This document shows positions 1 to 33,800 of a stretch of 64,000 nt of DNA, one piece after another. Position 1 is the stretch's first letter. The number at the start of each line of letters is the position of its first letter. The notes beneath the pieces are model-generated. The model had not been told where the DNA came from. It was given only the letters and a program-made list of their open reading frames with translations, and ran no database searches. The stretch is taken from NCBI GenBank assembly GCA_047495785.1, contig JBLDXI010000024.1, positions 3,038,001 to 3,102,000 on the forward strand, written 5' to 3'. This DNA is from Lepidodermella squamata (lineage: Eukaryota; Animalia; Gastrotricha). The translations under genes were made by a program, and so were the position numbers.

Positions 1-343
1 TTATCCTGAGTAACATAGAGCAAAATGGAGTTTAGGGTGTTCAAAAATAGATTACTAAGAAAGCCCACCTTTTTATACTTTTTACCTAAAATTAGGTATT
101 TATCGCCTCGAATTTCAGTTTTCGGTAATTAGAAGCTTCAATTGAAATTTTTAGGCTAAATGGGAGGCTCCCAGGGTCCTAAATGCCCGAGTAAAATTCG
201 GTTATTTAGCGGCTAAATTGCGAACTTTTTTTTATAGTGCATCTTTTTATAGTGCATATAGTGCATTTACCATTCGCATAGTAGTAGTGTAAAAGGGGCT
301 TATGTCCCCTACCATCTGTTGCCCATAACGTTCCACCCTATTA

Positions 344-1178
344 CATCTTTTTTCTTTTGCAATTTCATTATTTTTATTAAAGAAACACGTGATTATATTT
401 TCATGATTCTCAGCTTATTCATTTTTTTACTTTTTTCTACCTAAGGATTTACTCGATCTTCGAAGGTTCGCTGTATGCGAATACGAAACCCGAATTGGAT
501 GAATTTGATATCAAATTGAAGCTAGAGATCTGATCTATCTAGCTGTGAAATTAGAATACTGGATGCCATTTCATTCTTGAAGGTATTCAACGTTTTAGCT
601 GACTGGCTGTTCGGAAAGTTTCTTCTGATTTTACCTACGATAATGTTTATTTTTCAACAAATACCTACTAAGGAATAATTATATTACTTAGTCTTCGCTA
701 ATTTCATCATTTCATGATGAAACCAAAGCAATATTTGTGAAAACTACCTCAGCTTAGGGTAAGCTATTGCCCTAAATGCTACTAAAGCTCAATTTTTCGA
801 GGTACTATCGCTTCTACTCGAGATATCAACTCCGCCTGATTGTTCTAATCATTTTTGGGGAGGAGGGAGGGGCCTTATACCTATAAAATATAAAAACTAC
901 CCAAGGAAAACATCTTTGCAGTTAATTCTACTTACTCCTTAGTTTTTGCGAAACACATAATAATTTTGTCGATCTGATCGCATGTTTGAAAAGATTATAT
1001 ATCTAGCTTCAATTTGATATCAAATTCATCCAATTCAGGTTTTGTAATCGCTTACCTTCGAAGATCGAGTAAATCCTTAGGTAGAAAAAAGTAAAAAAAA
1101 TGAATAAGTTGAGAATCATGAAAAAATAAACACGTGTTTCTTTAATAAAAATAATGAAATTGCAAAGGAAAAAAGGTG
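344..1178. mobile_element. Long-TIR non-autonomous DNA transposon (MITE/foldback), TA-flanked
   Basis: ~190-bp inverted arms (344-535 vs ~992-1178), TA on both sides, no ORF inside. Confidence 0.8.
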
Positions 1179-1745
1179 TAGAGATGATAGATTGCTAAAA
1201 AATTAATTAAGACGATTGTAGAATTTTCAGACCTCTAGGATCCTCACATCCTCCTTGAAACAGGGAAAACCTTAAGACCCTGATGAATATCAACCCCTTT
1301 TTTATACCACTCGACTCCTCATTGATAGGTCTTTAAGTTAACATTAATAGATCTTAAAATTGGCATCAAAATCTCACAATGTTCAAATTCAATGCTCAAA
1401 TGGCATCAAAATTTCGCCACACCCCACTTTTCACTAGTTTCCAGTCATTTTCTCTTTTTGCTAACATAAAAAGCCCTTAATATGCAATGCAAGATTTTCA
1501 TAAATAGGTCACTGAGCAACCTGAAGTGAGCATGCCAACGACCAGCCAACCTTCATTAGTCCAATCAATTGCTTTTTGTACACGTGAAACTGTTGTTTTC
1601 AATGTTTCGCGACTTTTGGCACAATAATCAATTTCACTTGAAAACAACTCGAAATGTCTTACCCCTAAAATGTCTCTGTCGAATGTCAAAATGGCCACCG
1701 CTTCTCTCTCACTGGCTATTAAGCGATGCAGGCTGAATACCACTT

Positions 1746-1765
1746 TTATCGAGTGTTTTTTCACA
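1746..1765 (+). promoter_or_regulatory. Conserved GATA + forkhead-like upstream element (lectin 5' module A)
   Basis: TTATCGAGTGTTTTTTCACA, 319 bp upstream of ATG 2065; near-identical copies at 3930 and 30531. Confidence 0.55.
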
Positions 1766-2064
1766 CAATGTGAGCAAAGTGACTTCGCGATAGCGTCAAA
1801 TGCTATGCAGTTTCCAGGCAATTACAGCGATGGCAGGGCTAGCAAATTGACAGCGACGTTTATCATCGCGCTCCGACATTTTGCTGCCGTTGAATTATTT
1901 GATAATTATTCAGCTTTCTTCAAAGGTGCGAGAGGATTTATCATTAATTTAAATGAGACGATTCAAAAATTGAACAACGAATTGTCTATTATTGAGTAGA
2001 ATTTTAGTGCAAAAAATTGTTACCAAACTACCTTTGTATTCATCAAGAAAGAGAATGAGCATCG

Positions 2065-2654
2065 ATGACGATTAATTCGAGGAACATCCAACTTGTCTCG
2101 GCTTTTCTCGCTCTTCTGTTTGGTAAATATCGGCTGCCGCATAATGAGAGGGGTTAACAACTTCCGTTTCTTCTCTACTCCAGGGCAGCTTGCAGAGTCA
2201 TTCGGATTGTTTTATTGTAGCTATGGTTCAGGAAATATCTTAAGCTGCAAAAACGGAGGCACTTGTGTTAGCAACGATAAATGCAACTGCCTCAATGGGT
2301 ACACAGGAGATTATTGTGAGACGCCACCTTGTGAGTTATTCCCCCGTTGAACGATTCATATGCTTCGTCAATTCAAATGTTCAGCTTGCGGATTAACATG
2401 CTCGAACGGCGGAACTTGCACCATTGTTAACGCAGTTAGCACTTGCCAGTGCAGGTCAGGGTGGACGGGGACGACCTGTGATACGCGTAAGCATCTCAAA
2501 TTGTCAACAGCACAATATGTATTGTCATTTTATATTCGTTTCCTTCCTTTTACAAAAGCTAATTGCCAGAATGGATGTCTTAACGGCGCAACCTGTTCCG
2601 CCCCGAATACCTGTACATGTGCGTCTGGTTATACTGGATCAACGTGCAACAGTG
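2065..2654 (+). CDS. Orphan 5' module of the giant lectin gene family: signal peptide + 3 EGF-like exons (alternative first module or truncated paralog)
   Basis: Exons 2065-2122, 2184-2330, 2385-2486, 2559-2654 joined by GT-AG phase-1 introns give MTINSRNIQLVSAFLALLFG...CKNGGTCVSNDKCNCLNGYTGDYCE...; homologous exon for exon to 4281-4870; ends at a GTAAGT donor with no matching downstream body of its own. Confidence 0.8.
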
Positions 2655-3298
2655 GTAAGTTGTTCCTTTGTTTCGTATATGCTGAAAATCAAATTTCTCT
2701 CTCTTTTCACCGTCGTTCCCTTGGGGTTTTTCGAATAAATTCATCAAAGGGACAGAAGCCCGACTTCTTCCTCATTAAAAAAAAAACTTAAACTTTATTG
2801 ACGTGCAATTATCATATGCATGATTGCAGCACATAGTAAGGCATACTTATCATAGACACTCAAGTGTTAAGTATTGCGTCTTTGATTTTAACTTTGAATG
2901 CTTATAAACCTACTATCTACCTTGACATTCACTTATTCTTCCACTATTCTTCTTAATTGAGTTACTACTCAAGTTATAATCTTGCATAGCTATCTTGAAT
3001 GATAACTGAACGAAATGAAGATCCATAGGAACCGCAGATGAGCTCGAATAAGCGATGAGCTATACGAGATTCATTTTCTTCTCTGCATCGGCTCCTCTGA
3101 GGTCGGGCCATAGTCCCATCATTCGAATTCCAGGCTTGCAGGAAAAAGTGGTCTCGAAATCGCAGGAAGTCGCGATGATAAATAATCCATCTTCACCCTA
3201 TCATAGCTTCACCCTATGAATTAAATTATGCATCCTAATTTAGCGACCTATCGCTCGTTTTATTCCGGAAGATATTTAGAACACATCTCGTGAGAGTG

Positions 3299-3540
3299 AA
3301 CTATTGAGGCAATGAAACTTCTGCAGAAATTTGGAATCAACAGTGTCAAAGCTGTCGAAATTGCATCTCAATATTGAAGGACAGCGTTTGAATAGTAAAT
3401 CATCGCCTTTACTCAAATTATCAACAATCGAACCCCCAAATAGTTTATGAAACATACCAATCTCTATTATCAATTAATCATTTACTCATGTGTCTATTAG
3501 GCAATGTTACTGTATATATCCGTAAGCCAAAACCGCCAAT
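3299..3540. repeat. 242-bp dispersed repeat, inverted partner at 20340-20580
   Basis: Reverse complement of 20340-20580 matches except for one C in a C-run. Confidence 0.9.
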
Positions 3541-3929
3541 GATCAACACAAAAACGTTATCGATGATTGATGGAATGTACTGATCAAGGGGCATCTCGAT
3601 AATCACATAACCTTAGATGTCGGTTTTTTGTTAAGTGAGTTGAGGGCCATTTGCCATTTCAATTCCATTTCTGAGATCCGCAAAATTATATTGGTTAGCG
3701 TTCCTTATGGCTAAGTTTGTAAAGTTAGCAAGTTAGCTAAGTTAGTAAGTAAGTAAACTGCTGCTGGCTATTGGTCTCACTACAAAAATATTCAACCAAT
3801 TTGATGAATGGGTTTCTTGCCAGTCTTGAGATGACTCGACTGAAAGTCAATGTCAATCCCATTATTTCCCCTGCTACCTGCTACCCTTCGCCTATTTCAT
3901 TTTTAGACTAGGTGAGGAAAGTTATTGGA

Positions 3930-3949
3930 TTATCGAGTGTTTGTTCACA
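3930..3949 (+). promoter_or_regulatory. Conserved GATA + forkhead-like upstream element (lectin copy 1)
   Basis: TTATCGAGTGTTTGTTCACA, 351 bp upstream of ATG 4281; a second shared block GTGCGAGA..TTGATAAATTAATT lies at ~4146-4172. Confidence 0.6.
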
Positions 3950-4280
3950 CCCTGTACCATGTAAGATGTAAGAAACGGTTTTCAGCTGAAATATTGGCGT
4001 TGTGCTTCAAGCTGCTTAAAAGCACGGTTTCCAGCCGAAAACGGTCATTTAACATTTTAACTGCATTTTACTGCTAAGTCTTGGCGCCTATGAGGTGTAT
4101 ACCTCATGCATTATTGGCTTGAATGCTCATTCAGATTTTTCCAAAGGTGCGAGAAGATTGATAAATTAATTAGATGAGGCAATACGGGGTTGAGTTATGC
4201 GACGATAATGGTTATTACTGCGGCTTTCAAGTGCAACACATTTTTATTGAATTGAATTCTGGCAGGAAGATTGAGAATCC

Positions 4281-7200
4281 ATGGCAGTTAATTCGACAAA
4301 AATTCAGCTTGTGTGTGCCTGTCTTGCTCTGCTGTTTGGTAAAAATTGTCCACCATAATATAACGAAAGCGTCTCACTTCTCTCATTTATTATAAGTTTC
4401 GGAGTCAAACAGCGGCCCTGGAGATTGTAGTAACGGTGTAGGAAATCCAGATATCTGTCAAAACGGAGGCACCTGTGGTAGTGATAAGAAATGCGATTGC
4501 GTAGCTGGGTTCTATGGAGCCCACTGCGAATTGGGCCACGCAATTGGTGAGCCATTCTCCCGATAATAACACATTCGCGTGTGTCGAAACCTCTATATCA
4601 TTCGTCTTACCTTGCAGCTTGTTCATTAACGTGCTCGAACGGCGGAACTTGCACCCTTGTTAACGCAATAAGCTCTTGCCAGTGTAGGTCAGGGTGGACG
4701 GGAACGACCTGCGATACATGTATTTTCAATTTTCACTATGGAAATTGCCTTTTGATAGTTGAATATACCTCCAGTTTCTTGCCCAAGTGGATGTCTTAAT
4801 GGCGGAACTTGTTCCGGTCCAAACACCTGCAAATGCGCGTCTGGTTATACCGGATCAACGTGCAACAATGGTATAGTATTATAAGAGCATCGCAATTCCA
4901 TTCATTGTTTATAGCCGAACTTCACTCCAACCTCCTTTTTTGATAGCAAGTTACCATATATATATTCGAACATGTCTCGTATTTGATTTCTCTGTTTTGG
5001 CCCCAAACACGCACATCTCCTCAGATTCTAAAATCTTCGAACCTGATACCCCATAAGCTAGACCTTGCCGTCTTTTTTGTGGACAAATCATATCTGATTC
5101 TGAATTCTGAATTACAACGCTTGAATTTTAAGCATCTCAAAAAATTCGAGTTTTCGCTTCACTGGGGATTAAATTGGTCTCTGGCAGCTCTCAGATGAAA
5201 TGTAAATGTTCATGATTCATCGATTGAATACATTTCCAGCGATTTGCTCGCCAAGCTGTCAAAACGGTGGGTCGTGCACCTCTCCTGACGTTTGTCTGTG
5301 CACCAGCGGATACAATGGAACAACTTGCCAATCTCGTAAGCTATAATCCTTCTAACTTCCGATATAATGTCCGAATTAACAAAAATACAGCCATTTGCTC
5401 GACTGCTTGCGGTAACGGTGGAACATGCATTTCGCCGAACACCTGCAGATGCGCATCAGGGTGGACAGGACCAACTTGCGCTACACGTTTGCAGAATACA
5501 TTATTGATATTATAAATTTCTTACGATTAATCTTTTAAAGCGGTCTGCTCTCCAACCTGCAAAAACAATGGCAACTGCACGGCCCCAAACGTTTGCCAAT
5601 GTGCAACTGGATACATCAGCATAGATTGCAGCACAGGTTCTAAGATCCTCTTTCATTTTAATTTCACACTAAATTTTACGCATTCCCAGCTGTTTGCAAT
5701 CCTCCGTGTAAAAACAACGGAACGTGCTCTTCGCCTGATGTCTGCACCTGCACGGCCAAGTGGACAGACTCGACATGTTCAACACGTAAGGCTGAGATGT
5801 GAACAGAAAATCTATCAGATGCCATTTATACTCAGCTATTTGCAATAATCCGTGTCAAAATGGCGGGACGTGTTCCAATCCTGACGTTTGCACCTGTGTT
5901 GCTGGCTGGACGGGATCTACTTGCGCAACGCGTACGCTTTCGCGAATTTCTCAACGTTTAGTTATCTTTCAATCGTTGTCTTTCAACCAGCTATTTGCAA
6001 CTCGCCCTGTAAGAACGGCGGAACGTGCGTTGGCCCTGATCAATGCAGGTGTCCTGCGATTTGGGGCGGTCCGACGTGCGTAGACCCTGCTTGCCCCGCG
6101 CGTAACAACTGCTCAGGGCACGGCAAATGCATAGCAGCGAACAATTGCACGTGTGACTTTTTGTGGAAAGGCGACAATTGCGATCAATGTTTGCTCGCAC
6201 TCCATAAGTATAATCGATTTAACTTGTTGCTTAAACAGGGTACTGCCAAGACGGCTGGTGTCAAAATAATGGCAACTGTTCAGGCCCGAAGTAAGTTTTT
6301 TGTCGGTAAACCTGTCCGTTGCTAGGCTAGAGGCGAGAAAACTTAGCAGTTAGCATCTCATCAGGTATGGACAGCTACTTAATAACTACGCAGTTTAAAA
6401 AAAAACCCCAGAAAATAAGGAAAAAAGAGTTAAATGATGGAAATTTAATTGTAGCCAATGTCAATGTGTGTGGAAGTATTGGCGCGGGCCGAGATGTGAG
6501 CAACGTGAGCGGTGAAGTAAACAAAATCTCTTCGTTATTTACATTCAATTTTTTGCAGCGGTTTGCTCTCCGGAATGCTCCAACGGTTTGAAGTCGCAAG
6601 TTGTATCACTTCAGACTTTTGCAATATTTCTTCCTCCACCCAGGTGGCCAATGCCTATGGTCAGGTGGTAATCAGTATGTTGTAAGAATTTAGTTCTCGC
6701 AATTGGTTAATACTTCTACGTTCAAGGTGCCATTGCCCAACAGGCTGGACAGGAAATGATTGCACAATACGTAGGCGATATATTGAATTTATTGAAACAT
6801 TTAAGTTACTCTGAATAAAAATAAAGCTGACGCCGCTTCCTGGGCTGGGCACCAAACATTCATCAGCCAGAATTCGAAGACTTGGACCCAAGATGACGTG
6901 TACAAGAAATTCACGCTTGATGCGAGTGCTTATCCCCCTGGTTATTCCTCAGCGCGTAATATTTGTAGTCTGCAGTGTTAACCTTTTCCTAAATATGTTA
7001 TTTCAAGCGACGAGTGTTGAGAACTGCTGCCCTTGTGGGACTTTCCTACTCGATAACAACTGCTACTTTGTGGTGAATGGTCATACTTCGTGGAATTTCG
7101 GTGAAACTATGACTCAGCCTCATTATACCTACGCAACTTGCAGCCACGCTGGAGGGGTACCTGCCACCTTCGAAACAGGCGATGCCCAGTCAAAAATGGC

Positions 7201-10200
7201 TAGTTTAGTAAAATGGCTTGCCACTGAGCAAAATATTCAGCTCGGGGACAAACCAGTTGATCTCGCGACTAGAGTGGTTAATTATGACGACGATTCATTT
7301 TATGACCTTTGCTTGCTTATCGGCGGTTTCCGAGATCACGCCACGAATAAGTGGTACTGGCAGACGTATCCGCCGGTCGAGATTGACAGCTCACTCTGGG
7401 TGAAAAACGAGCCACAGGGATACGAATTTCTTTGCATGATACCGCACAAAAAACGCCCAATGCTCAGAACTTATTACTACTGGTGGGGCGAACAGCCTCT
7501 CGTCTGCATGATACGAAACCCGTGTTCGACTATGCCCGTCTGCAAGCCTGGCGTTACGAAGGACAAGCTTGACACTGTTCGGATGTGGGATAGATGCTAC
7601 AGCACAGGCGTGTCTCCAAATAATGACTGGGGCACGGCTTTTGTGAATCGGCTCCAGGCAGAACAAATTTGCCAGAGTAAGAATGGATTCTTAGCATCTA
7701 TAAGGCAGCAATTCGAGCCTTTCTATTGGGCGTGGGGCTTGGACGTTACATTGACAAACGATCAAACTGCATTCAGCTTCCCATACCGAATCTGGAACTA
7801 TCAGGGATGGATTGGCTACAACCATCTGAACTGTTAATTTCTTGTAATTAGTGATGATTTTGAATTCACCTCATCTTTTTAACAGCTGATTACTACTGGG
7901 ACTCAAGCAATATTAACCTGGCGAGTCCTTACCACGCGAACTGGCGATTAGGTTCGGGCCAAGAGCCGAACGACCAAGATGCTAGTCTTTGCTCTGTTGC
8001 GAAATTCGACGGATGGATCGATGAGATTTGCTCCATGAATACAAACGTAAATTGAAAAATTAGTCATTTTGAAGATTACGTGAATATTCTTCTCGCAGAG
8101 AATCGCCTGTGAAAGCGGTGTTGGAGTACCAACAGTCGTCGCAGATACAGATAGTGGCAGCAATTGCGCTCTGACGTGCCCGATAGCACGTAGTTTCATT
8201 TTGGGCTCTAGTCTTTCTAATTATTTTATTTTTAACTTTCAGCCGGTTGCCCAGCTAATTACGCCTATGTAGCCTGCTTTGATTCTTGCTACAAATTCAA
8301 TACGTAATATCAATCAGCGTTACTTATTAAATCTGGCTAAAGATGAATCTCCCACCAGGGACAACTCAAAGACTTACTTCGAAGCACTTTCTGATTGCGT
8401 AAGTAAATGAAATTATGAAATCAATTGAATAAACACGTATTCTCAGGTTAATGATGGTGCCACATTTGCGAACATCAACTCAACGGAAGAGTTTACCTAC
8501 ATCACTAGCATGCTTGACAAGAAGAAAGACTGGTTCATCGGTCTCGGAGATTGGACAAGGCGGTCGAAAGGTAATCTGGGCACAGGCGTTACTACCTATG
8601 TTGGTGACTCTGATGGAACTTGGACATGGCAAGACGATACAATAGCCGATTCGATATCTTACGATACGATTGGCACCACCTTTTCAAAGAGCCCAGATCC
8701 ATATAAATTCCTGATATGGGAGAAACAACCTGCGCCCGCGTCTGATAAAGCGAGTGCCCCTTTCCTAACATTCTTGAGATGGCAAGCCTCGAGTAATCAA
8801 TGGTATATCCCAATCAGTGATAAGAACAAGTTCGACTACAAAGCAGCGTATGTTTGCGAGTACAACTCGGCGTGCTACAAGTGTCCAATGTCTTGGGTCA
8901 AATTCGGGACTTACTGCTTCCAATATTCAACCTTCGATGACGGCGATGGCACTTACTTTGATAAAAAGCTGAGTTGTCAGAACCAAGATCCAAATGCCTA
9001 TATTTGGGCTCCGAAAACGGAGATGCTGATTCTCTTCGTTCGTGTCTTGCTGCAGCAGATGAACAAGTTTGACTCTAGTAAGTCAGTATGGATAGGGCTT
9101 GAAAAAAGAGCAGATAACACATGGGGTTGGAGTGATGGTAGCGATGTAGCTCCGGGTGATGCCTATGACATATTCCGCGGAACAACTGTGACTGCAAATA
9201 ACTGGGCTTTCTACGTCGACATATCAAACAGAGCGAATAATTTGCAAAAAGTGACTGATCAGAATGGAACGCAATGGAAGCTTGCCAATCAAAATTCGAC
9301 ATCCTACCGCGTGATTTGCCAACTGCCTGGTACTTATGGCGTTGGTCGGCCATGTCAACCAAACTGTCCGACAAAAGGTGAATCATTGCGATTTCACGAT
9401 TATTAAGAGCATTCTGAACATTGTGCTTTAGTAACTTGCCCTGGTGGATACGAATATGCTCCATGCACGGACTCATGCTACAGAGTTTCAGGGTTCGTTA
9501 GATCTCCACAGAATTATAAATAATATGTGTTCTAGATGTAATTTGGCAGAAAGGTTTTGTAGTTACCTGATTGAATGCCACAACAATTTTCTCAGACATG
9601 TTACTTTTTGTGACTCGATACATCTGTTATGATTTTGCAGTTGGGGATCGAGGTATCTTGACGCTCTCAAAGACTGCGTGAGTTTTTTGCATATTGCAGG
9701 AACATATTATAGAATTCGGTCATTCCAGATGGGCTCCGGAGCATCTTTGGTCAACTTCAACTCACAAGACGAGTTCCGCCGGGTCATGTCAATCGACAAC
9801 ATTGACGAGAGCAAACAATACTTCATTGGTCTGCAAGACTGGGCAAGGCGTTCGCGGCGATATCCTGTCACGTACTCTTCTAATTATCAACCCTACATTG
9901 GTGATCCTGATGGTAAGTGGTACTGGTCAGATGACACCGGGCCAATCGATGCTTCGGATATACCCGACGGCTTCTTCGTCCCGTCGCCGGACCCCTGGAG
10001 CTTTCTAATTTGGCAGCAACGGCCTGCTGTTTTTTCTGATCGTAGCAACAACTTTGTAGCCACATTGACCTACTCAAAATCGCGTTCTCAATGGTATATC
10101 GCCGTGAATAATAGCAATTTCGCGTCAACCGCTCGCTACATCTGCGAGTACAGCATGGCGTGTACAATGTGCCCTAGCGGCTGGTCGAAATTCAACGACA

Positions 10201-13200
10201 AATGCTTCAAAGTCCTAAATAGTAATTACTACACAGGCTGGCAGGCAGTGCAGAATTGTCGCGATTTGGGATCGATAGTGATAGCGCCTCGAACCGAGAG
10301 CCTTATTATGTATCTCCGAAGTACAAACTATGTAGCGAAATGGGGATGGTCAGCTATGTACGTTGGGCTTCTCGCCAAAGGTACATCGTATACATGGGCT
10401 GATGGGAAGGATGCTGATGCGACCGATGCCTACGACATAAAAGCTGAACCAACTTCGGATGCGATTTATTTAGTAGGAGTTGGTCAAGACACGTCTTTGA
10501 CGAAACAAGACGAGCAAGATTACTTGCAATGGTCAAGCTTGAACAACAATTCCTATAGTGGATTAGTGGTTTGCCAAAGGAATGGAAGCTATGCAAACGG
10601 TGTCTTGGTGACTACCCAAGCTCCACCAGATTGCTTAGACGTATGTAAAACAATCATGGCCTAGATTTTCATTGCATAACGATTCCTTTTTATCAATAGG
10701 ATGGCTGTTGCAAATGCCCTTTTGTTAGGTTTTCAGACCAGTCGTCTCAAACCGATACATGCTACTACTTCTCCAACTACACGTAAACAATTATTTATTT
10801 TGACTGCCTTGTTTTTGTATTCATATTTTCCAGGGCAACGTGGGATGACGCCAGCTGGACTTGTACTGGAATGGGAGGTCATCTAGTGATTGCGGACACA
10901 ATGACGAAGCTTCAGTATATTTTGAATCACCCTAAAATGGTTGCGCCGTACTACTGGACCGCACTTTCCCTAAGTAAAATCTGAATATTGCCAAAGAATA
11001 AGCTGATTGTTATTACCAGATTCCTATGGCATTTGGGCTTGGCCGAACACTCCTAACAATTACACTGCTGCACTGAACAGTAGGGTTTAAGTGGAATGAA
11101 ATCAGCTATAAAAAATATTTAATCCAGGATATATCATTGGCGACAATGCGTGGCCATCAACGCCGAATTGTTACGCAGCTCTCATTTCGAATAATGAAGG
11201 AATGTTGGTCCCGTTCTGTAACAATTCAAAAAGTGTTCAGATCACAAACGCAACCGTTGGCAATACGACGACGTATGATCGGAGCACGCAGTTTCGATTC
11301 ATCTGCGAAATAGTTCACTCGCCTACTTCTTGCCTTGGTAAAATTCGACATTAATTTTTGTGTTTCCTCAGGCTTTTAGAATTATGAATCTGAATTTAGA
11401 CGTTCATAGACGCAATCACAATTTCTCGCGTCACTTTCCCAACTTCCTAAAATATGGGTTGGCCCTACGTCTCATCTTAAATTATGCCTGACATTGATTG
11501 CTGGAGCACGGCATATTTCTAGACATCTATTTCATGTTTTTTCGAATTTAGGCTGCAAATATCCCAGCGATGCGGTCGATTTGCAGAATTTGAACAATGG
11601 CCACAGGATTTCTGCTGATAAATGCATTTGGCTCTTCGATGACACTGGGGACCGCTCGACTAATATCAACACATGCAAAGCGGCTGGAATGCGGCCTCTA
11701 TCAATTTTGCAGAATTACGAATCGAGAATTATGACCAGAGCCATGTTCGAACTTGGAAAAGACTCGTTTTGGCTGGACCTGGTGCTGCGAAATAAGAGTT
11801 TGCTACCTTGAAATTAATTCTAAAGGTTTCCTATTTCCTTTTGATCGACAGCTGACTACGTCTGGGAAGGTGAACCGACCACCTGGCACACGACTCCCAA
11901 CAATCGTCTGGTGGGCTTGCCATGGAGAAACAACTGGTACCAGCCATGTACCCGAGTTGCAAACGACATGAACATTTACACGCGAAACTGCCAAGATTAC
12001 TCGATCCCAATTTGCACCGTTCCATCGGCGGCGTCATGCTCAGATATGTGCCCAGCTGGCTTTACTTCAGTTGGTGATACTTGCTATCGGCTAGTAACGT
12101 AAGATTTAGCATTTAGCATTTAGCAACAGCCGAACTTTCTTGACAAATTGTAAAGGTCACCAACAGCAAATAGCCCGTTTGCTGCTAGGACGTATTGCTA
12201 CAACAACTTTAATAGTTATAACCTTGCTTCGATAACGAGCACTAAAAAGTTCCAACAGCTTATCGATTACTTGACGTCAACTAACAGCTTACTTATCGGA
12301 TCCGCGATTTGGCTTGGCTTGGACAACAGCATAGTTACGTCCCACTCTGCATTCGATAATGCGAATTTAGTGCGATCAGGGGATCCTGATTCTGGTTTGG
12401 AATTGTATACATTCAAATAACTTGATAGCTAAAATGGTTTCTTCTTTAGTCTGGGAACTTGATAGTGGTGATAAGCTACCAATAACGTCGTTTGGTGCGA
12501 ATTCTGATGCGAGTTTCTGGGATGCAAGTTCGCCTAACAGCAGTCATCACTACGCCTATCTCTATTGGGATACTACAAACATCCGCGTTCGAACAATTTC
12601 GAAGAACACCCCTCTGAATGCATTATTCGTTTGTGAAAGGCCACAACCTTGCTTAGAATGCGAACTGGGCTGGGTATGTATTATTATCTTGATTTTCAAG
12701 TTTATAATTCAAAAAAATATCTAGTGGTTTTTCAATGGGCATTGCTATCGTAAAGTTTCTATCGTCGCCGGATCAAAGTTCAGAAGCGTCCGGAATAAAT
12801 GCGAATTCATGTCTTCGTACTTAACAACAATCAACTACCCGATGGAGAATATGTTTGTCAGACAATTTGCTGGCTTCGATAAATACATCTTCATGGGGAT
12901 ATACACTGTAATGACCTACAACTTACCGCTAAAAGAAGATTATTTCGAATGGGAGGACGGTTTGCGAATGAACGCGAGTCAGCTAAATCTATGGACCAAT
13001 AGTGAGCCAAATATTTGGAAAGGAATGGAATACTTATCCGCAATCGCCTCTAACACAAATGAGTGGAATGACGTTGACCCGGAGCACGGCAGCCCAAACA
13101 TAGCTGTTTGCGAAAAAGATGCGACCCCACCTACCATAAAATGTCCGAAATCAGGCTCTGCCGCATCAGCTTGTGGTGACAGCGTGGCAAACAGTATCTT

Positions 13201-16200
13201 CGTCAGTGCAAGTGGATTCACGGCAAGCTCTACCTTCACCAACGGTTCGGTTTCATACCCACCATCGAACATAGCCCTGGGAAATCCGTGGTGCCCTGAT
13301 CCTGTCGTAGCCTTTTCGCCATCAAGGCCTGCTTGGATAAAATTTCAGTTTACTGACGGCCCTGTTTACGTCAGAGCAATCGGAACCGAGGGTCCGACTA
13401 TTGGAACGGGCCGAGTGCTTGCTTATATCATTAGTTACAAACCAAGTTCGACCTACCCGAGGGAACTGCACGTACATGCCCACAAATCCACGGCTTACAT
13501 AACTAAAGCTTCACCGATCATATTCGCTGGAAATGGAGCAGAAACGGTGAAAAACGCCCAAGAAATATGCCCCCGGATACCAGCTACTGAGTTGACGATT
13601 TGGATACTCAGCTATGCTGTTATGCCATTTCTTAAGGTGGACCTGAAGGGATGCGCATCTCCAGGAAAAAGTAACCGTTCTATGTTTGAACCCTCAGCGA
13701 TTTATGAATGATTTTTGCTTTCTAGGTAGTCCAATGTGCGAGTGTTGGCATGAGCTCTTCGATGGCAAGAACACAACGACATATTCGTCTCTTTCTGTGA
13801 GCGCAGACTCAGGCAATGCCTCCGCAGCAAACGCCCTCACCCAGGCAGACCCTACCCAGATCATTGCGGGGTGGACACCAACAGTTTTCGGAGACGGCCT
13901 AAACTGGTGGAAAATTCAGTTCACCGTCCTCAAGGTTGTCACTGGTCTCATCATGCACGGCAGCAATGATCCGGCTAAAGCTAGTCAATGGATTACTTCT
14001 TACTACGTCCAGTGGTCTCATACCGGTTACGACTACACCTTCAACTACTATCAGAACTTGGATGGCACTCCAAGGTTATTCATCGGGCCAATGAACGCGA
14101 CGGCGCCCACTCAACAAACATTTTGCCCGCCTATGAAGCTGATAGCCTTCAAAATCATCCCTGTCTCATACAATGTAGCTCCAACAATGGTTGTTAATCT
14201 GTTTGGCTGCTCTGCTCGAAACAGGCGATGCTTCGATTGCTGTGACGTGATTGGCTTATGCACTTGCGCATGTCCAGTGGGGTAAGATTTCTCTAGAAAT
14301 AATATGGCTTTCTGATTAATGTTATGTTATCAGGTGGTCGGGTACGTCTTGCATGTCTCTCGCCTCTGGAAAGACTTCTTACATCGATGCCCAGTCTCCC
14401 GTTTGCCAGCGTGACTTTATCTATGACGCTCTTACTCGCTGGGGTGGTTCACTAACGACATCCAGCTCCAGCTCTGCCAGTGCATATTACGACGGGAACG
14501 AGGATTGCCCATTTTTCGCGATTCAGGCCACGTCCTACGATTCTCGCACATTCTTTCAAATTTCCTTCGGAAAGTCGACCTACGTCTCGGTATTAAGTCT
14601 AAAGGGCAAGACTGTTAGTAGTGAAGCGAGATACATCACCTTCTATGCTCTCTGGTTCTTGGTCGATAATACAAATGACGAGCTGTTCTATCCCATCCTC
14701 AATCTCCAAAGCAATCCTCAGTCAGGACTGAAGTCCATTCCTGGAGCCAGAGATACGACCACCTATACGTCGTATCAGTTTTGCCCCAATATTCGAACCA
14801 AAGCTCTTCGGATAGTCCCATTGAAGTTTGTTGGGTCGAGGCCGGAATCCTTCGTAAGAACCTTAGGGTGTCCTACTCATGCTCCGTGCTCCACGTGCTG
14901 TACAAGCGATAATGGATGCCAATGCCTGTGTCCCGTCGGTTATTCGACGTCTTTTGGAGTTGGGTACCAGCCAAACCCATGGCCTCATTGTGGTAAGAAC
15001 TTACTCGAGTAACCTCAAATGCTTTATAGCTATTATAGATCAATGGACCATGCTCCAAGTGGACTGTGAAGATCACGCTTTTCGCCAATCCAGCCTCGCC
15101 AGCTCGACCTACACAATCTATCCGCCGGCTACCAAATCGCCAATTCCTGTCTATTGCGATATGACAAGTTACGGTGGCGGATGGACCGTCATCCAACAAC
15201 GCTTGGACTACAGCCAGAGTTTCTATCAGAACTGGGCTGACTATAAAGCTGGTTTCGGATCTCTGACTAGCAGTTTCTGGCTTGGAAACGAGTACATCTA
15301 CATGTTGACCTCCGGCACGAATCGTTACGACCTGCTGATAGAACTGACAACAGTGGATGACTCAGTTGCTATAGCCTACTACAAAGATTTCAGCGTCGAT
15401 TCTGAGGCACTGTCGTACACATTACATGTCGGAAGTTTCGACTGTAGCACTGATATCGGTGACTCACTGACTCCGCTCCATGATGGTCAGAAATTCAGTA
15501 CTTTTGATAACGACACGTCAACGAGTGGTGCGGGATTTGCTTGTGCGAAGAATGCATATGGAGGATGGTGGTACAAAAGACCCGCGACCACCGTTAAGAC
15601 GTGCCAACAGGCCAATTTGAATGGAAACGGAATCGGAAAGGCTGAGGGATCGATGATTACGTGGGCTACATGGCGAGGCTATTGGGAAAGTATGAAAACT
15701 ACTAAAATGATGATTCGACGATCTTCAATGCCCTTCATGCTTCATCGTAAGTTCCATAGCCATTAAAAATAAATTCAAGTAAAAAGTTCCATCTAAATTC
15801 AAACCCTGATTCTCAAATTGAACAACAATATTCACATGCCATAGAGCTGCGACCCCAATACCCTTATCCTGTCGATTGTCTCGACATCCGGCAATACAAC
15901 CCCACTGCTCCAAGCACCAACTATACGCTATACACTGTAACCGGTGAAAGTGTGTCTGTCTATTGCGAGATGAACGCTCTGGATGGCGGTTGGACCGTGA
16001 TTCAACGGAGGTACTACGATACTAGCGTAACCTTCGACCAAAACTTCACCACCTACGTTCGGGGCTTCGGATCGCCTCTCGGTGCCCATTATCTCGGCAA
16101 CAAATGGATTTACGCGATCACAAACGTTGACCTCACCTTCATTCCCTATCAACTGGCTGTAGTTGTCGAAGATTATAATGGCGAGAAGCGGAGTTCAATC

Positions 16201-19200
16201 TACGACGCATTTTGGCTAAACAATAACAGCTCCTACGAGTTGCTTGTTTACGGCTATAATTCCGATGGGACTACTGTAGAGGTTGCTGGAGACGGTCTGA
16301 GTACGCAGAGATGGCAACCGTTTCGAACCAAGGATCAATCGAAATCCTCTTGTTCGGCATCTTACAGTACCGGATGGTGGCGCCACGGCGGGTGGTATGA
16401 TAGCTACAAGTGTAGCGAAGCAGACTTGAACGGCATGTACGATGTCAACACCTGGGAAGGAGGTGTATTCTGGTCAAGATGGAAGGGCCGATATGAAAGC
16501 TTGAAATCAGCAACGATGATGATCCGCCGGGCTGGTCCGAAGCCAATCGATTGCTTGGATATGGCTGGGCAAGGCATGACTAAGGAGGGCCTTTACTACA
16601 TATACCCGTACAATATGAAGCCATTACGGGTCTATTGCGACATGAAAACTTTTTACAACTCACCGAGTTACTCAGCCGGCATTGGCTGGATCGTTATCCA
16701 ACGGAGGTCGAGGTTTGATATACCTTTCAATAGGACGTGGTCTGAGTTCAAGAAAGGCTTCTCGTCGGCAAATAATGGTCTTAGCGGGGATTTATGGCTC
16801 GGTCTGGATAATATCTACGCCCTTACTGCTTCGACGGCGTATGCACTGCTTATCACGCTGAAAAACCCAGTTGATAATGGTACTTACTACGCGTACTACG
16901 ACGATTTTTCAATCTCAGGCGAGAGTGACGGATACCAATTATATGTTGATAACTTCGATCAATCAACCAAGCCCTCTCAAGCTGCCGGGAATGGGCTGGA
17001 AACGTCTGCTAACCAGCCCTTTTCTACCTACGATAATGGAGATCGTAAGGACTGTGTTTCAAGTGGTAAGCTCAGTCCATGGTGGTTGCCCAGTGACTGT
17101 TCAATGTCCAAAAGTAACCTCAATGGCTATTACAAGGACTCTCGAGACCTAGCTGGGGTTGTTTGGAGCACTTTAGCCGATCTATCCACCTCAATGTATT
17201 ATACCCAAATCGCGATTCGCAGGAAAAGCCGAATCAAGGACTGTTCGTACGTCGCCACCTCATCTGGCGTTTATACCCTCACCCTGCCCGACGGTGGAAC
17301 ATTCCGATCATACTGCGACATGGACACAAGTTATTCATCTACGACGTATCCTAATAGAGGAAATGGTTGGACGGTGGTTCAGAAAAGATCTTTGAACAAC
17401 GCGAATTTTTGGCGCGAATGGGATGACTACAAAAATGGGTTTACAGGAAATCTCAGCTACAGTGGGGACTACTGGCTGGGCCTTGAAACTTTCAGTCGCT
17501 TGACCATGGCTGGGTCTTATTCCCTTTTGGTGTCCTGTAAAAACGTGGATGATAAGTTCTATTACGCTTATTACAACGATGTCAAGGTTTATGACGAAAG
17601 TCAGGGGTATCGTATCTTAGTGAGCGATTTTGACGAAACTACGAGCAATAAAGCCGGGGATTCTTTCAATTTTATCCACAACAATCAGAGCTTCAGCGCT
17701 ACTGATAAAGGAAGCTTCACAAAGCCGTGTTTTAAAAGTGGTAATAGACCTTATTTTGGGCCATGGTGGTACATTCCGTGGGATAGTGACTATTGGCCAG
17801 ATGGCATTGATCCGCAGTGTTGGATGGCAGCTAACCTTAACTCGGCGAATTGGGGCAGTACAGATTGGGGTTTCGGTTTAAACTGGGCGACCCTAACGTC
17901 TTACAATATTTCATGTAAAGCCACTCAAATGGCTATCAAACAAAAAGCAAGCGAGCAGTTGAACCGGCCCAGGGCGGCTACAGCGAACATGTGTGGGCGA
18001 AACACGATGTTGAAACATACTTGCAAACATGCGAATCAACCGGTAGCTGGGGATTCTACGCGGGTAATGCTCACTGAAAAAAGTGGAGTTTACGCTGCCA
18101 CTGATCTTGTCTGTAAAGGTAATTTCACTTAGGTCACCTTTCACGGGGCGATATTCAAACATTTTAACAGCTTACGCCGAACCTCAAGATTGCTCGTGGA
18201 AGCAAACAAAAGCCGCGACTAGCAGTAAGTTTACCTCCCAAACGTACGGCGACCTCACCGGCGATAACGGTGATGGAGTCGCTGCGAAATTCACTGCTTT
18301 CTGCGACATGGAAACGTTCGGAGGCGGCTGGACAGTTGTCCAGCGTAGAATCGACGATACGACAACTTTTATGCTGGATCAGTCAAGTTTCGAAACTCCA
18401 TTCGGGGTTCCGAACAAGAACTTTTGGTTGGGCAATAAGGTGATCAAAGGCTTGACATCAGCAGCTGAATATGAGCTGCTGGTCGAAATACGAGTCGCGG
18501 ACAACTACGCCTTCGCCCTATACAAACTGTTCTATCTATCAAGCGACGCATTTGTTTTGAACGTGCAAAACTATCAGAAATGCTCCACCGCAGGGGATTC
18601 ACTGACTTCTCTCAATGGATATTCCTTTACCTTCGATATTTGCGGAGGTTGGTGGTTTCCCCAACCCTCGCCCTGTGTATCTACCACCCAGTCGGCACCA
18701 ACCTCTAATTTGAATGCTCAGTTTGGAACTCAGAGCCCGATAAGTGCTGGGATACACTGGTTCACCTATAACAACAATTTCGTCCCCAATTTAAGTTGGA
18801 CATCAATGAAAATTCGCCGTTATCCAATGACTCATGGCAGGTATGTCGAAGTGCCCGATTTCAAGTGCAATAAGGGCAAAAGTGCGACTGTTCCTAACAT
18901 CAAAACTGCAGAGGATTGCCAAAATGCTTGTACCAATTATACGGATTTCACATGCATTACAGCCGTTTTTACGAAAGACGAATGTACTGTGAGGTCTGAA
19001 ACCTGTCCGCCAGGCTCAGGCGCAACAAAGTCGGACACCAGCACATTCTTCCGAATAGATGACTGCGATATGTTTCCGGGTGTTTGCGGGCCCCCTCCGA
19101 CTATGACGGGGACCACGCAAGAGGTAATATCGGCTGTTTTCGGGTCGAAACTTGCGATCAACTACACTTGTCTGCTGGGTTTCACCAACTCTCTGTGGAA

Positions 19201-20145: not shown

Positions 20146-20195
20146 GGGTGATACTAACAAGTTGCTGTCAAGTTTCGCCCAACTGAAAGTCCAGG

Positions 20196-20247
20196 AGGTG
20201 GAGTTGGAGTCCCGAAGCTGGAGTGTCGACCCCTGTACTTCACACAC
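20196..20247. mobile_element. Terminal fragment of the small hAT-like MITE family also seen at 31805-31969 and ~30158-30185
   Basis: GTTGGAGTCCCGAAGCTGG...CCCCTGTACTTC matches 31911-31961. Confidence 0.55.
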
Positions 20248-20339: not shown

Positions 20340-20580
20340 ATTGGCGGTTTTGGCTTACGGATATATACAGTAACATTGCCTAATAGACACATGAGTAAAT
20401 GATTAATTGATAATAGAGATTGGTATGTTTCATAAACTATTTGGGGTTCGATTGTTGATAATTTGAGTAAAGGCGATGATTTACTATTCAAACGCTGTCC
20501 TTCAATATTGAGATGCAATTTCGACAGCTTTGACACTGTTGATTCCAAATTTCTGCAGAAGTTTCATTGCCTCAATAGTT
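20340..20580. repeat. Inverted partner of the 3299-3540 repeat
   Basis: Near-perfect reverse complement, 241 vs 242 bp. Confidence 0.9.
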
Positions 20581-30530: not shown

Positions 30531-30550
30531 TTATCGAGTGTTTGTTCACA
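30531..30550 (+). promoter_or_regulatory. Conserved GATA + forkhead-like upstream element (lectin copy 2)
   Basis: TTATCGAGTGTTTGTTCACA identical to 3930-3949, 328 bp upstream of ATG 30859. Confidence 0.6.
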
Positions 30551-30858
30551 ACCTGTAAGAAAGCGTTAATTTTCATATTCTATTCTAACTGCTCGAAAGC
30601 ATCGTTTCCAGGCGATTTCAGCCGGCATGAGCAACAATTTAGCTATTTACCATCGACGTCTTTGCTCCTACACATCGTTTAGGCATAAATTGATCTAATG
30701 AGCATTCAGTATTTCCAGGATGTGCGAGACAGTTGATAAATTAATTAAACAAGACACTTCAAGCCTGAGTTTTGCACAGACAATTTAATTTTACTTCGAC
30801 TTTCTAGTGCAACGAATATTTTTTGGACATTATTGTTTTGCAGGTGGAGCGAACATTG

Positions 30859-33800
30859 ATGAAGGTTAATTTAAAGACCGTTCAACTTGTTTGTGCCTGT
30901 CTCGCTCTGCTGCTTGGTAAAAATGGCATATCACTCAACGAATGACGTAAAATTCCCCTCTTGGTTGCAACTTTCAGAGTCAATCAGCGGCCACCCTCCC
31001 ACTCCCGGAACCAGCCCTAGCCCTGGAGATTGTAGAAATGGTGCAGGACATCCAGATAGCTGCAATCATGGAGGCACTTGCGGTAGCGATAAGAGGTGCG
31101 ATTGCGCAGCTGGATTCACAGGGACATACTGCGATGATGTAATTGGTGAGCCAGTTTTCTGAAAGAAACGCGCACACGTGTGTCAAAATCATGATTCCAT
31201 TTACCTTGAAGCTTGTTCACTAACGTGCTTGAACGGCGGAACTTGCACCATTGTTAACGCAGTTAGCGCTTGCCAATGCAACTCAGGTTGGACGGGGACA
31301 ACTTGCGATACAAGTGAGTATATTCAATTTTCACAATGGATATATGCATTATATTATTTGTCAATATAACTCAAGTTTCTTAAAACTAAAATTGAAAGGT
31401 TTTACGCACAGTGTAACTTTCCATTGGTGCTCATGATCACCTCGCGAAATTTAGAGTGCGCGTAAAAAGTTTTATTTAACTTTTCTCGCGCGAGAACACC
31501 GTATTTATTTGATAGAGGGCATCAGGATTTATTAACGGTTTACAGCCATTTCACACCAAATTACACATACATTTTCTGAATTTCTACAGATGACATCAAA
31601 TTTCCATCAAAGAAGGAAATCCCTAACTCCTTCATTTTCAACTAGTTTTCTGAATGTCTCTCCTTTTCCCAAACTAATATTTCTATGCTAAAACATGGGT
31701 TTTTTAGGTTATAAATCTCATACAGTAAAACCTGTCATCTCGAAGGCTCACGGTGCCATTCGACCCATTCGACTTCTAGAGAGATTCGAGATAGAGGGAG
31801 ACAGTAGTGTGCGAAGTGGGTACGAGGTAGGATCCGGGAATTGAGGTGTTTTCTCGGTTACTTCGGCAACCAGCCAAAGGGTCCCCCTTGGTTGTTTCAG
31901 CCTTCTTCTGGTTGGAGTCCCGGAGCTGGGGTGTTGCAGCACCCCTGCACCCCTGTACTTCGCACCATGGGAGACAGACATAACTCACAGGAAGTCAGCC
32001 CTGTGTCTATTTTAAAGCTTTTATTTCATCAACCCAATATTTTAGAGCACGAAAAGCAACATTTTATTGAATATTATCGCTATATAAGTCGCGAGCCACG
32101 TTTTTGGCCTTAAATGTGCTAAGACAGGCCGCGTGATCTGAAATAAAGTGTTTAAGCAGGATTACGCAATGAAGGGTTGTCGATTACGAGCGGCTTCAGC
32201 TTCTCACCGAGCTCTCTTACATGCTCTTTAGCCACTTTGCGCCTCGCAATGCGCGCGCGTCATCGCTCAACACTAAAAATGAGCTTCGAAGACTCGACTT
32301 CGAAGATTCAAATAATGCACCATATGGCTACGGTTCCTTTCCCGTCCTTCGACTTTCGAGATGGAAAGAGTGAATTATATGCGCTACATGCTGAAAATCC
32401 CACGGTTCCTCGGCAATACGGCGGTCGAGATACACGGGGTTCGAGATAACAGATAACAGGTTTTACTGTATTCGTCAATCGTGTTTGAATCAATTTTGAT
32501 TTATTCCATTGTCCCTTAGAATATTCGTATTCGTATTCGTAGACAGAGCATAACTATTTCCTTTACCTTTGAGTTATCTTTGAAACACCTGGAATTAGAG
32601 ATCTCTCAAATCTTAAAACTCAGGTTTTCGCCTTACAACTGTCAGATAAAATTTTACACTTTCTTGATTCTCTATTGAATGCATTTGCAGTTATTTGCTC
32701 GCCAAGCTGTCAAAACGGAGGGTCGTGTACATCTCAAGGCGTTTGTCAGTGCGCCAGCGGATACAATGGTACAACCTGCCAATCTCGTAAGCTAAAAGCC
32801 TTGTGACTTCTTAAAAAGCTCGAACTCGAGTGAAATTTTAGCCATTTGCTCGACTGCCTGCGGTAACGGTGGAACATGCATTTCGCCGAACACCTGTAGA
32901 TGCGCATCCGGGTGGACAGGACCAACTTGCGCTACTCGTTTGCTGAACAATTGATTGACTTTCGAAGTTTCTTATAATTTTGACTCTTTTATAGCGGTGT
33001 GCTCTCCAACCTGCAAGAACAATGGCAACTGCACGGCCCCAAACGTTTGCCAATGTGCAACTGGTTACATTGGCATAGATTGCAGCACAGGTTCAAAGAT
33101 CCAGTGTCATTGGTTTTCCATTTTCATGCTATGCATTCCACAGCTGTTTGCGACCCTACATGTAAAAACAACGGAAATTGCTCTTCACCCAATGTCTGCA
33201 CTTGCACAGCCAAGTGGTCAGATTCAACGTGTTCAACACGTAAGGCTTATCAGATTTGAAAAGGAATCTATCAGATTACCCTTCCACTCAGCAATTTGCA
33301 CTAATCCTTGTCAAAATGGCGGGACGTGTTCAAATCCTGATGTTTGCACTTGTGTGGCTGGCTGGACTGGACCCACATGCGCTAAACGTAAGACATTTGT
33401 TGACGGCTCGTTATTTCTCGAACCAAGAATTTGGTTGTCACAGCAATTTGCAGCTCGCCATGCGTGAACGGCGGAACGTGCTTTGCGCCTGATCAATGCA
33501 AGTGCCCGTCGATATGGGGCGGTCCAACATGCGCCGATCCGGCTTGCCCTGCGCGAAACAACTGTTCGGGGCACGGCACCTGTGTGGCGGTCAATAATTG
33601 CACGTGTGACTTTTTGTGGAAGGGCAACAATTGCGATCAATGTGAGCTGTCTAATGTATTAAATGCATTTATTTATTCTCAGCTTTGCTTCGCAAGGGTA
33701 CTGTCAAGACGGTTGGTGTCAAAACAATGGCAATTGCTCGGGCCCGAAGTGAGTCTTTATTTGACACACTTGGGTGCTAATTCTTTGCGCAAAAGGAAAG

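What the first reader, a model, noticed from the sequence alone, without database searches (positions are those of the whole stretch)
2065..5240. Duplicated promoter + leader + EGF module could act as an alternative variable N-terminus on a shared body
Seen: module A (2065-2654) and module B (4281-4870) each have the conserved upstream elements, a signal-peptide exon and three EGF exons with intact frames and splice sites. Both end in G|GT phase-1 donors that would join the acceptor at 5239/5240 in frame. The first EGF exon differs strongly among A, B and copy 2, while the second is nearly constant. Inference: a protocadherin/UGT1-like 'variable 5' cassette plus constant region' system diversifying the tip of a giant lectin; more modules could lie upstream of the window. 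Caveat: an out-of-frame ATG at 2055 precedes module A.
Basis: partly seen in the sequence, partly recalled or inferred. Interest (0 to 1): 0.75.

Follow-up and report, generated by a model that had tools for sequence, protein, structure and literature searches.

The report
Duplicated gene start on giant lectin
A giant secreted lectin gene of a small freshwater animal (probably a gastrotrich) has a second, old copy of its start upstream (control region, signal peptide, three EGF domains) that selection has kept intact, so it probably gives the protein a second tip, but no RNA data were available to show where it joins.

Summary
Modules A (2065-2654) and B (4281-4870) each have about 320 nt of shared upstream blocks, a 58-nt signal-peptide exon and three EGF exons with intact frames and splice sites.

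Module A is not a relic. Its introns no longer align with B or C above a shuffled baseline, yet the second and third EGF exons keep 81-87% identity. dN/dS there is 0.16-0.21 and all 18 cysteines are kept. Neutral drift would preserve this with P<0.001.

Every EGF exon here is phase 1-1, so A4 joins B2, B3, B4 or 5240 equally well.

No further module exists in the 40 kb upstream, and none elsewhere in the genome by DNA search.

The modules have four exons with internal acceptors. The genome reportedly uses spliced-leader trans-splicing, and each ATG is preceded by an acceptor. This differs from protocadherin/UGT1 clusters.

New support comes from paralogues. One has three intact selected modules before one body. 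Another has a strongly selected orphan EGF exon between two starts. The scan had already noted that second locus (s1-374169).

No transcript could be found.

Verdict: probably an alternative 5' start. The junction and exclusivity are unproven.

The parts
1746..2047 (+). Module A upstream conserved blocks. These are the 20-mer at 1746-1765, GTTTCCAGGC at 1810-1819, ATTCAG/GGTGCGAGA plus an AT-rich TAATT block at 1908-1957, and AGTGCAA at 2006-2012. Read as promoter-like region plus outron.
   Evidence: Three-way alignment with B and copy 2. The 20-mer is exact only at the three module sites in the genome. Identity is above the shuffled baseline, z 2.7-6.0.
2046..2059 (+). Candidate spliced-leader acceptor AGs just before A's ATG (AG at 2046-47, 2050-51, 2052-53 and 2058-59).
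   Evidence: Sequence. Use as a trans-splice site was not tested here. The idea comes from earlier notes on this genome.
2055..2075 (+). Out-of-frame uORF (6 codons plus stop) that overlaps the start codon of A. It would be removed only if the last AG (2058-59) is the acceptor.
2065..2122 (+). A1: signal-peptide exon, 58 nt, ends in phase 1, donor GTAAAT.
   Evidence: 68% amino-acid identity to B1.
2184..2330 (+). A2: first (tip) EGF exon, phase 1-1, fast evolving. An alternative in-frame acceptor lies at 2195|2196.
   Evidence: Pfam EGF_2 25.4 bits. dN 0.55-0.68 against B2 and C2. No closer relative in the genome.
2385..2486 (+). A3: second EGF exon, phase 1-1, nearly constant.
   Evidence: 29/33 residues identical to B3 and to C3, dN/dS 0.16-0.18. 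Pfam EGF_2 26.7 bits.
2559..2654 (+). A4: third EGF exon, phase 1-1, with a consensus donor G|GTAAGT.
   Evidence: 81% nucleotide identity to B4, dN/dS 0.21. Pfam EGF 24.4 bits.
2655..3929 (+). Spacer between A4 and B's upstream blocks. No convincing coding ORF. It holds dispersed repeats at about 2775-2870 and at 3299-3540, one AATAAA (2734) and two ATTAAA (2774, 3220).
3930..4265 (+). Module B upstream conserved blocks. These are the 20-mer at 3930-3949, GTTTCCAG at 4027-4034, CATTCAG/GGTGCGAGA plus an AT-rich block at 4128-4178, and AGTGCAA at 4230-4236. The candidate spliced-leader acceptor CAG lies at 4263-4265.
4281..4338 (+). B1: signal-peptide exon, 58 nt.
4397..4546 (+). B2: tip EGF exon, phase 1-1, with a weak AAG acceptor. 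The ancestral acceptor 6 nt downstream is now GG.
4618..4719 (+). B3: second EGF exon, phase 1-1.
4775..4870 (+). B4: third EGF exon, phase 1-1, donor G|GTATAG.
4871..5239 (+). Unusually long intron (369 nt, against 50-72 nt elsewhere in this gene) before the first shared exon. Its last 55 nt are 78% identical to copy 2.
5240..5335 (+). First exon of the shared body: an EGF exon, phase 1-1, followed by a run of 96-nt EGF exons and then the C-type lectin, discoidin, fibrinogen and Sushi parts.
30531..31381 (+). Copy 2 start, used as the comparator. Upstream blocks run from 30531 and the candidate acceptor is CAG at 30841-30843. Exons are C1 30859-30916, C2 30978-31145 and C3 31212-31313. A relic of intron 3 and of the lost third EGF exon's acceptor lies at 31314-31381.

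Best explanation
Module A is an old partial tandem duplicate of the 5' end of the giant EGF/C-type-lectin/discoidin/fibrinogen/Sushi gene. It comprises a control region, an acceptor just before the ATG, a signal-peptide exon and three EGF exons. It is still translated and works as a second, alternative start of that gene.

A transcript that begins at A is cis-spliced from the consensus A4 donor (2654|2655) into the downstream gene. This could happen in two ways. It could go directly to 5240, replacing B's three EGFs. Or it could go to B2 at 4397, adding A's three EGFs in front of B's. Both are in frame.

Transcripts that begin at B give the other isoform. The isoforms differ mainly in the fast-evolving first EGF at the mature N-terminus.

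Shown here: the integrity of A, purifying selection on its exons, its conserved upstream blocks, and the recurrence of multi-module starts in paralogues. Inferred: that A is transcribed, that its donor reaches the shared body, and which acceptor it uses.
For: A's introns align with those of B and C no better than shuffled sequence (z 0.6-2.1). A3 and A4 keep 81-87% identity (z 8.7-11.3), with dN/dS 0.16-0.21.

All 18 EGF cysteines, the ATG and 14 splice-site bases are intact. Under neutral drift of only 0.1 substitutions per site, P(ORF and cysteines kept) is 5e-4.

Upstream blocks are conserved in A, B and C and are unique to these three sites in the genome.

A4 ends in a perfect G|GTAAGT donor with no coding-like ORF downstream.

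Paralogue evidence:
- Gene 3b (C24:3.43-3.456 Mb) has three intact leader+EGF+EGF modules before one body, with nothing body-like between them. dS between the modules is saturated and dN/dS is 0.13-0.20.
- Its most upstream module is the counterpart of the only start of the neighbouring gene 3a. That start must splice across a 3.4-kb intron to the body.
- In the paralogue at C24:4.56 Mb, an EGF exon with no leader and no promoter block lies between two start modules. Its dN/dS is 0.087, so it can only be expressed from the upstream start.
Against: No RNA evidence. Three protein word searches with A- and body-derived ORFs found no same-species transcript product. An A4-specific 23-mer is absent from the metagenome contigs.

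The in-frame fit is uninformative because all exons are phase 1-1.

Module B has internal acceptors and a good acceptor just before its ATG. Cis-splicing of A4 to that site gives a stop after 8 codons, so productive splicing needs that site to be bypassed.

No complementary intronic pairing that could loop out B was found.

A's start codon is preceded by a uATG in better context.

An AATAAA lies 80 nt after the A4 donor.

Copy 2 works without any A-type module.
Confidence: 0.55

Rival explanations
1. Module A is a separate small gene that encodes a secreted protein of a signal peptide plus three EGF domains. Its mRNA would end in the spacer. Either the A4 donor is read through to the TAA at 2789-2791, or A4 is spliced to a short terminal exon. 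In this reading it never joins the giant gene.
For: The same selection evidence fits this reading. The frame stays open for 45 codons past the A4 donor to a TAA at 2789-2791. AATAAA at 2734 and ATTAAA at 2774 lie nearby. A has its own upstream blocks.
Against: The stop and the ATTAAA lie inside or at the edge of a young dispersed repeat at about 2775-2870, which has 95-99% identical copies elsewhere. They therefore cannot be the long-term 3' end. Cleavage after the AATAAA at 2734 would give an mRNA without a stop codon. The A4 donor is a perfect consensus, which a terminal exon does not need. No coding-like ORF is present in the spacer. In the paralogue, the orphan exon Z shows that upstream-start transcripts run on and are spliced at least 2 kb downstream. 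Five upstream modules at three loci have all survived, which is unlikely for truncated duplicates that lack 3' ends.
Confidence: 0.25
2. A-started transcripts exist but are mostly unproductive or regulatory. They would be cis-spliced into B's pre-ATG acceptor, giving a premature stop and decay. Alternatively they would be cut by trans-splicing at B, so that A acts by promoter interference or as an upstream outron rather than by supplying a protein tip.
For: B's pre-ATG CAG at 4263-4265 is a good acceptor and is the first strong one downstream of A4. Using it gives a stop after 8 codons. A has a uORF. Earlier notes report spliced-leader trans-splicing in this genome.
Against: This cannot explain codon-level purifying selection on A2-A4 or the retention of all 18 cysteines.
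Confidence: 0.12
3. Module A is a decaying relic of a partial duplication, or an assembly artefact of the amplified DNA used for this genome.
For: Partial 5' duplicates usually die. The genome that fits this assembly was made from amplified DNA.
Against: There is no stop, frameshift or lost splice site despite divergence that has erased intron similarity. A and B are 63-87% identical by segment, not near-identical, so this is not a collapse or chimera artefact.
Confidence: 0.03

Closest known systems
Variable-first-exon gene clusters (clustered protocadherins, UGT1A). [quoted passage not shown]
   Same: Tandem, same-strand start units, each with its own conserved upstream blocks, lie upstream of one shared body. 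The variable part encodes the distal, ligand-facing end. The units are old and individually kept by selection. Paralogues carry up to three units.
   Different: There are only two units here. Each unit has four exons (leader plus three EGF exons) with internal acceptors, rather than one large exon without an acceptor. An acceptor also sits just before each ATG. Skipping of the downstream unit is therefore not automatic, and an additive isoform (A1-A4 plus B2-B4) is equally possible. Splicing to the constant part is not shown.
Ordinary alternative promoters or first exons created by partial tandem duplication of a gene's 5' end.
   Same: The same origin and the same logic: two starts, one body, and isoforms that differ at the N-terminus.
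   Different: Here the duplicated unit includes the signal peptide and three whole domains, is ancient, and recurs in several members of one gene family.
Fibrinogen-related and other multi-lectin immune-type proteins of invertebrates that diversify their recognition end, such as snail FREPs and arthropod Dscam1 exon arrays. This comparison is from my own knowledge and was not checked in papers here.
   Same: A secreted protein with fibrinogen-type and lectin domains and a fast-evolving variable end. The diversity is encoded in tandem duplicated exons.
   Different: The variable part here is an N-terminal EGF tip with its own leader, not internal mutually exclusive exons. No docking or selector-type complementarity was found. 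An immune role is only inferred from the domains.
Alternative spliced-leader trans-splice site use in animals with trans-splicing. This comparison is from my own knowledge. For this genome it rests on earlier notes only.
   Same: Each module has an acceptor 15-17 nt before its ATG with no paired donor nearby.
   Different: Use of these sites was not tested here. Each module also has promoter-like conserved blocks, so the choice may be made at transcription rather than at trans-splicing.

Membership tests
Variable-first-exon cluster (protocadherin/UGT1 type) | Tandem array of several variable 5' units upstream of one set of constant exons | tested here: inconclusive
   Two units (A and B) at this gene. 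None in the 40 kb upstream and none elsewhere by DNA search. Paralogue 3b has three units and another paralogue has two plus an orphan exon.
Variable-first-exon cluster (protocadherin/UGT1 type) | Each unit preceded by its own promoter | tested here: inconclusive
   About 320 nt of conserved upstream blocks, including an AT-rich block about 105-125 nt before the ATG, are present in A, B and C. No transcription-start data.
Variable-first-exon cluster (protocadherin/UGT1 type) | Each variable unit is a single exon with a donor but no acceptor, so downstream units are skipped automatically | tested here: not met
   Each unit has four exons with three internal AG acceptors, plus an acceptor-like CAG/AAG 15-17 nt before the ATG.
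Variable-first-exon cluster (protocadherin/UGT1 type) | The donor of each unit is spliced to the first constant exon | not testable with these tools
   No transcript of this locus could be retrieved. Phase compatibility is trivial because every exon is phase 1-1.
EGF-like domain (Pfam PF00008 / PF07974) | Six-cysteine pattern and an HMM score above the gathering threshold | tested here: met
   A2 25.4, A3 26.7, A4 24.4, B2 23.1, B3 28.5, B4 26.3 and C3 27.5 bits all pass. C2 at 21.0 bits is just under the 21.5 threshold. Each exon has six cysteines.
Secretory signal peptide | N-terminal hydrophobic core followed by a small-residue cleavage region | tested here: inconclusive
   All three 19-residue leaders have a hydrophobic core ending in LLFG or LLLG. 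No signal-peptide predictor was available.
Spliced-leader trans-spliced 5' end | Unpaired 3' splice site shortly upstream of the ATG that receives the leader in RNA | not testable with these tools
   The acceptor-like sequence is present. Trans-splicing in this genome is reported only in earlier notes. I did not verify it.
Unprocessed pseudogene / dead partial duplicate | Disabling mutations and dN/dS near 1 | tested here: not met
   No stop, frameshift or lost splice site. dN/dS 0.16-0.21 on A3 and A4. Neutral simulation P<=5e-4.

The most novel reading that the evidence does not exclude
The giant multi-lectin genes of this gastrotrich carry tandem arrays of one to three complete 'promoter + leader + tip-EGF' cassettes. 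One cassette would be chosen per transcript, by promoter choice and/or by alternative spliced-leader trans-splicing, and joined to a shared body while the downstream cassettes are skipped. This would be a germline-encoded way of varying the recognition tip. It would be analogous to protocadherin/UGT1 clusters, but built from multi-exon cassettes in a trans-splicing animal, and it would need a so far unknown rule for skipping exons that have good acceptors.
Probability: 0.3. Interest if true: 0.75.

Novelty: new variant of a known kind. Interest (0 to 1): 0.5.

Why it matters
If the upstream modules really splice to the shared body, this family shows how partial 5' duplications can be turned into a small repertoire of alternative recognition tips on a very large secreted lectin. 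It would do so in a phylum with almost no molecular biology. It also raises a concrete mechanistic question: how does an upstream donor bypass a downstream leader exon that has its own acceptor, in an animal that trans-splices? One long-read cDNA experiment would settle it. If the modules are instead separate small genes, the finding is an ordinary case of partial duplication giving small EGF proteins.

Tried and rejected
1. Transcript evidence through the protein word search. Three queries by reference were used: the genomic ORF 2360-2791 that spans A3, intron 3 and A4; the A2-containing open frame 2123-2347; and the body exon ORF 6893-7837. None returned a same-species product. The best hits, at 45-52% identity, were genomic read-through ORFs from other organisms.

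2. An exact A4-specific 23-mer in the metagenome contigs gave no match.

3. More modules: a DNA search of the whole genome found only A, B and C. tblastn of all module exons against the 40 kb upstream found nothing. There is no A-like relic between the two gene copies.

4. Long-range intronic complementarity that could loop out module B: none beyond chance.

5. Special conservation of the intron end before 5240: 78% identity, not clearly above the other copy 1/copy 2 introns at 67-75%.

6. My first identity measure with free end gaps gave 72% for shuffled sequence. I replaced it with a full-length measure that has a shuffled baseline.

7. I first placed B's pre-ATG acceptor one base off, at 4265. 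The correct exon start is 4266.

8. The large representative protein search and structure prediction were not run. They could not decide the splicing question.

Exons were searched one by one, by reference. Joined reading was done only inside scripts, for frame checks and the neutral simulation.
Full report
WHAT IS THERE

The window is eukaryotic, with short introns of about 50-70 nt. It is contig C24:3,038,001-3,102,000 of a 121-Mb assembly in 151 contigs. Earlier notes of this scan take the genome for the gastrotrich Lepidodermella squamata. The published assembly of that species is 122 Mbp, with one adult transcriptome (PMC11660948). This fits but does not prove the identity.

The window holds two tandem copies of a giant gene. 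Copy 1 runs from 4281 to about 20,000 and copy 2 from 30,859 to about 44,000. The large exons carry C-type lectin, F5/8 type C, several fibrinogen C-terminal and Sushi domains, behind a run of 96-nt EGF exons.

Exons:
- Module A: 2065-2122, 2184-2330, 2385-2486, 2559-2654.
- Module B: 4281-4338, 4397-4546, 4618-4719, 4775-4870.
- Copy 2 (C): 30859-30916, 30978-31145, 31212-31313.

All frames are open, all introns have GT...AG, and each EGF exon matches the Pfam EGF models.

About 320 nt upstream of each ATG share blocks in A, B and C. The outermost 20-mer occurs exactly at these three sites in the whole genome.

Amino-acid identity of the first EGF exon is 38-62%. For the second it is 85-88%. 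The uATG at 2055 opens a 6-codon uORF that overlaps the start codon.

Copy 2 lacks the third EGF exon. It keeps a recognisable relic of intron 3 and of that exon's acceptor, 80% identical over 64 nt. The exon was therefore ancestral and was lost there. The long intron that remains in copy 2 also holds a dispersed element at 31720-32475.

MODULE A IS FUNCTIONAL CODING SEQUENCE

I used a full-length identity measure with a shuffled baseline.
- A's introns are indistinguishable from random against B and C (z 0.6-2.1).
- B and C introns still resemble each other (z 2.0-4.6). A is therefore the oldest branch.
- A3 and A4 are 81-87% identical to their counterparts (z 8.7-11.3).
- dN/dS is 0.16-0.21 on A3 and A4, and 0.47-0.49 on the tip exon A2.

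All 18 cysteines are kept. In a neutral simulation, keeping the ORF and the cysteines has P = 5e-4 at 0.1 substitutions per site and below 5e-5 at 0.2 or more. A relic or an assembly artefact is excluded.

Every EGF exon in this gene is phase 1-1. A4 therefore reads in frame into B2 (4397), B3, B4 and 5240 alike.

Each module also has an acceptor-like site just before its ATG. In B it is CAG at 4263-4265, in C it is CAG at 30841-30843, and in A it is AAG at 2045-2047 with three more AGs after it. Earlier notes report spliced-leader trans-splicing at such sites in this genome. I did not verify this.

If the A4 donor used B's site in cis, the frame would stop after 8 codons. I found no intronic complementarity that could do this.

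The array does not extend. There are no modules in the 40 kb upstream and none elsewhere by DNA search.

THE RIVAL: A SEPARATE SMALL GENE

Read-through of the A4 donor stays open for 45 codons, to a TAA at 2789-2791. AATAAA lies at 2734 and ATTAAA at 2774.

That stop lies in a young dispersed repeat at about 2775-2870, with 95-99% identical copies elsewhere. It cannot have served through A's long history. The spacer holds no coding-like ORF. A4 keeps a perfect GTAAGT donor.

SUPPORT FROM PARALOGUES

I examined that locus myself (C24:4,556,001-4,576,000, minus strand).
- It has two leaders and two TATAAAA-containing promoter blocks, named X and Y here, each followed by two EGF exons.
- Between them lies one EGF exon, Z, with good phase 1-1 splice sites and no leader or promoter of its own.
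- Z against its counterpart Y1 has dN 0.13 and dS 1.49, so dN/dS is 0.087.
- Z can only be expressed from the upstream start. Those transcripts therefore run on and are spliced more than 2 kb downstream.

A survey of other family loci found a second gene pair at C24:3,411,001-3,471,000.
- Gene 3a has one module, a 3.4-kb intron and then the body.
- Gene 3b has three intact modules (leader plus two EGF exons each), about 4 kb apart, before one body, with nothing body-like between them.
- Among the three modules dS is saturated and dN/dS is 0.13-0.20.
- The most upstream module is the counterpart of gene 3a's only start (dS 0.74, upstream region 76% identical, z 10).

Across three loci, five upstream modules or exons have been kept by selection. 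This is hard to explain unless they feed into the downstream body.

WHAT REMAINS OPEN

No RNA evidence could be obtained. Exons were searched singly by reference, and joined reading was used only inside scripts.

I cannot say whether A is transcribed, which acceptor its last donor uses, or whether the modules are exclusive or additive.

PROBABILITIES

| Reading | Probability |
|---|---|
| Alternative 5' start feeding the shared body | 0.55 |
| Separate small secreted EGF gene | 0.25 |
| Mostly unproductive or regulatory transcripts | 0.12 |
| Relic or artefact | 0.03 |

COMPARISON WITH KNOWN SYSTEMS

[quoted passage not shown] It fails one defining feature of that family: a single acceptor-less variable exon. 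Its array is also minimal at this locus. I therefore file it as a new variant of a known kind, not as a member.

Noticed in passing
window 3299-3540 (+) and 20340-20580 (-): A 242-nt dispersed-repeat member is present as two 99-100% identical inverted copies that bracket module B plus the whole body of copy 1. Other genomic copies are only 78-90% identical. This could be two recent local insertions, conversion between the copies, or an artefact of amplified-DNA assembly.
   Followed up: partly
L024+L025+L014+L015+L026+L027 (C24:3411001-3471000), joined positions 20795-30004: Paralogue gene 3b has three intact, anciently diverged leader+EGF+EGF modules before one giant body. Its neighbour, gene 3a, has a single module followed by a 3.4-kb intron.
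   Followed up: yes
L012+L013 (C24:4556001-4576000), minus strand, reverse-complement positions 8288-8401: An orphan EGF exon Z lies between two start modules of another paralogue and is under strong purifying selection (dN/dS 0.087). The introns just after Z and after its counterpart Y1 share a short motif (AGGGGCTCG) about 15 nt from the donor, although synonymous sites are saturated.
   Followed up: partly
window 31720-32475: A dispersed element with short terminal inverted repeats and more than 50 related copies in the genome sits in the long intron of copy 2, next to the place where the third EGF exon was lost.
   Followed up: partly
window 342-1180: A foldback or MITE-like element with inverted arms of about 195 nt (89-100% complementary) lies just upstream of module A's conserved blocks.
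   Followed up: no
window 4395-4404: B2's ancestral acceptor (CAG in A and in copy 2) is CGG in B. The usable acceptor is an AAG 6 nt upstream, still in frame. This weak site is the one that an A-started transcript would have to skip or use.
   Followed up: partly
window 5000-20200 versus 32600-44000: The two gene copies are a mosaic. They are 75-87% identical in the 5' EGF part and 89-94% identical in the 3' fibrinogen part. Copy 2 lacks about 4.9 kb of the middle. This suggests gene conversion at the 3' end and domain loss or gain.
   Followed up: no
window 23758-24563: Three tandem copies of a unit of about 370 bp (77-83% identical over the 64-nt stretch reported by the repeat finder) lie in the region between the two gene copies.
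   Followed up: no
window 44522-46741 (-), 47338-50207 (+), 57480-61295 (+): A single-ORF class C GPCR (ANF receptor plus 7tm_3), two adjacent ORFs with beta-propeller (PQQ_2-like) matches, and a NACHT/NB-ARC plus ankyrin gene.
   Followed up: no
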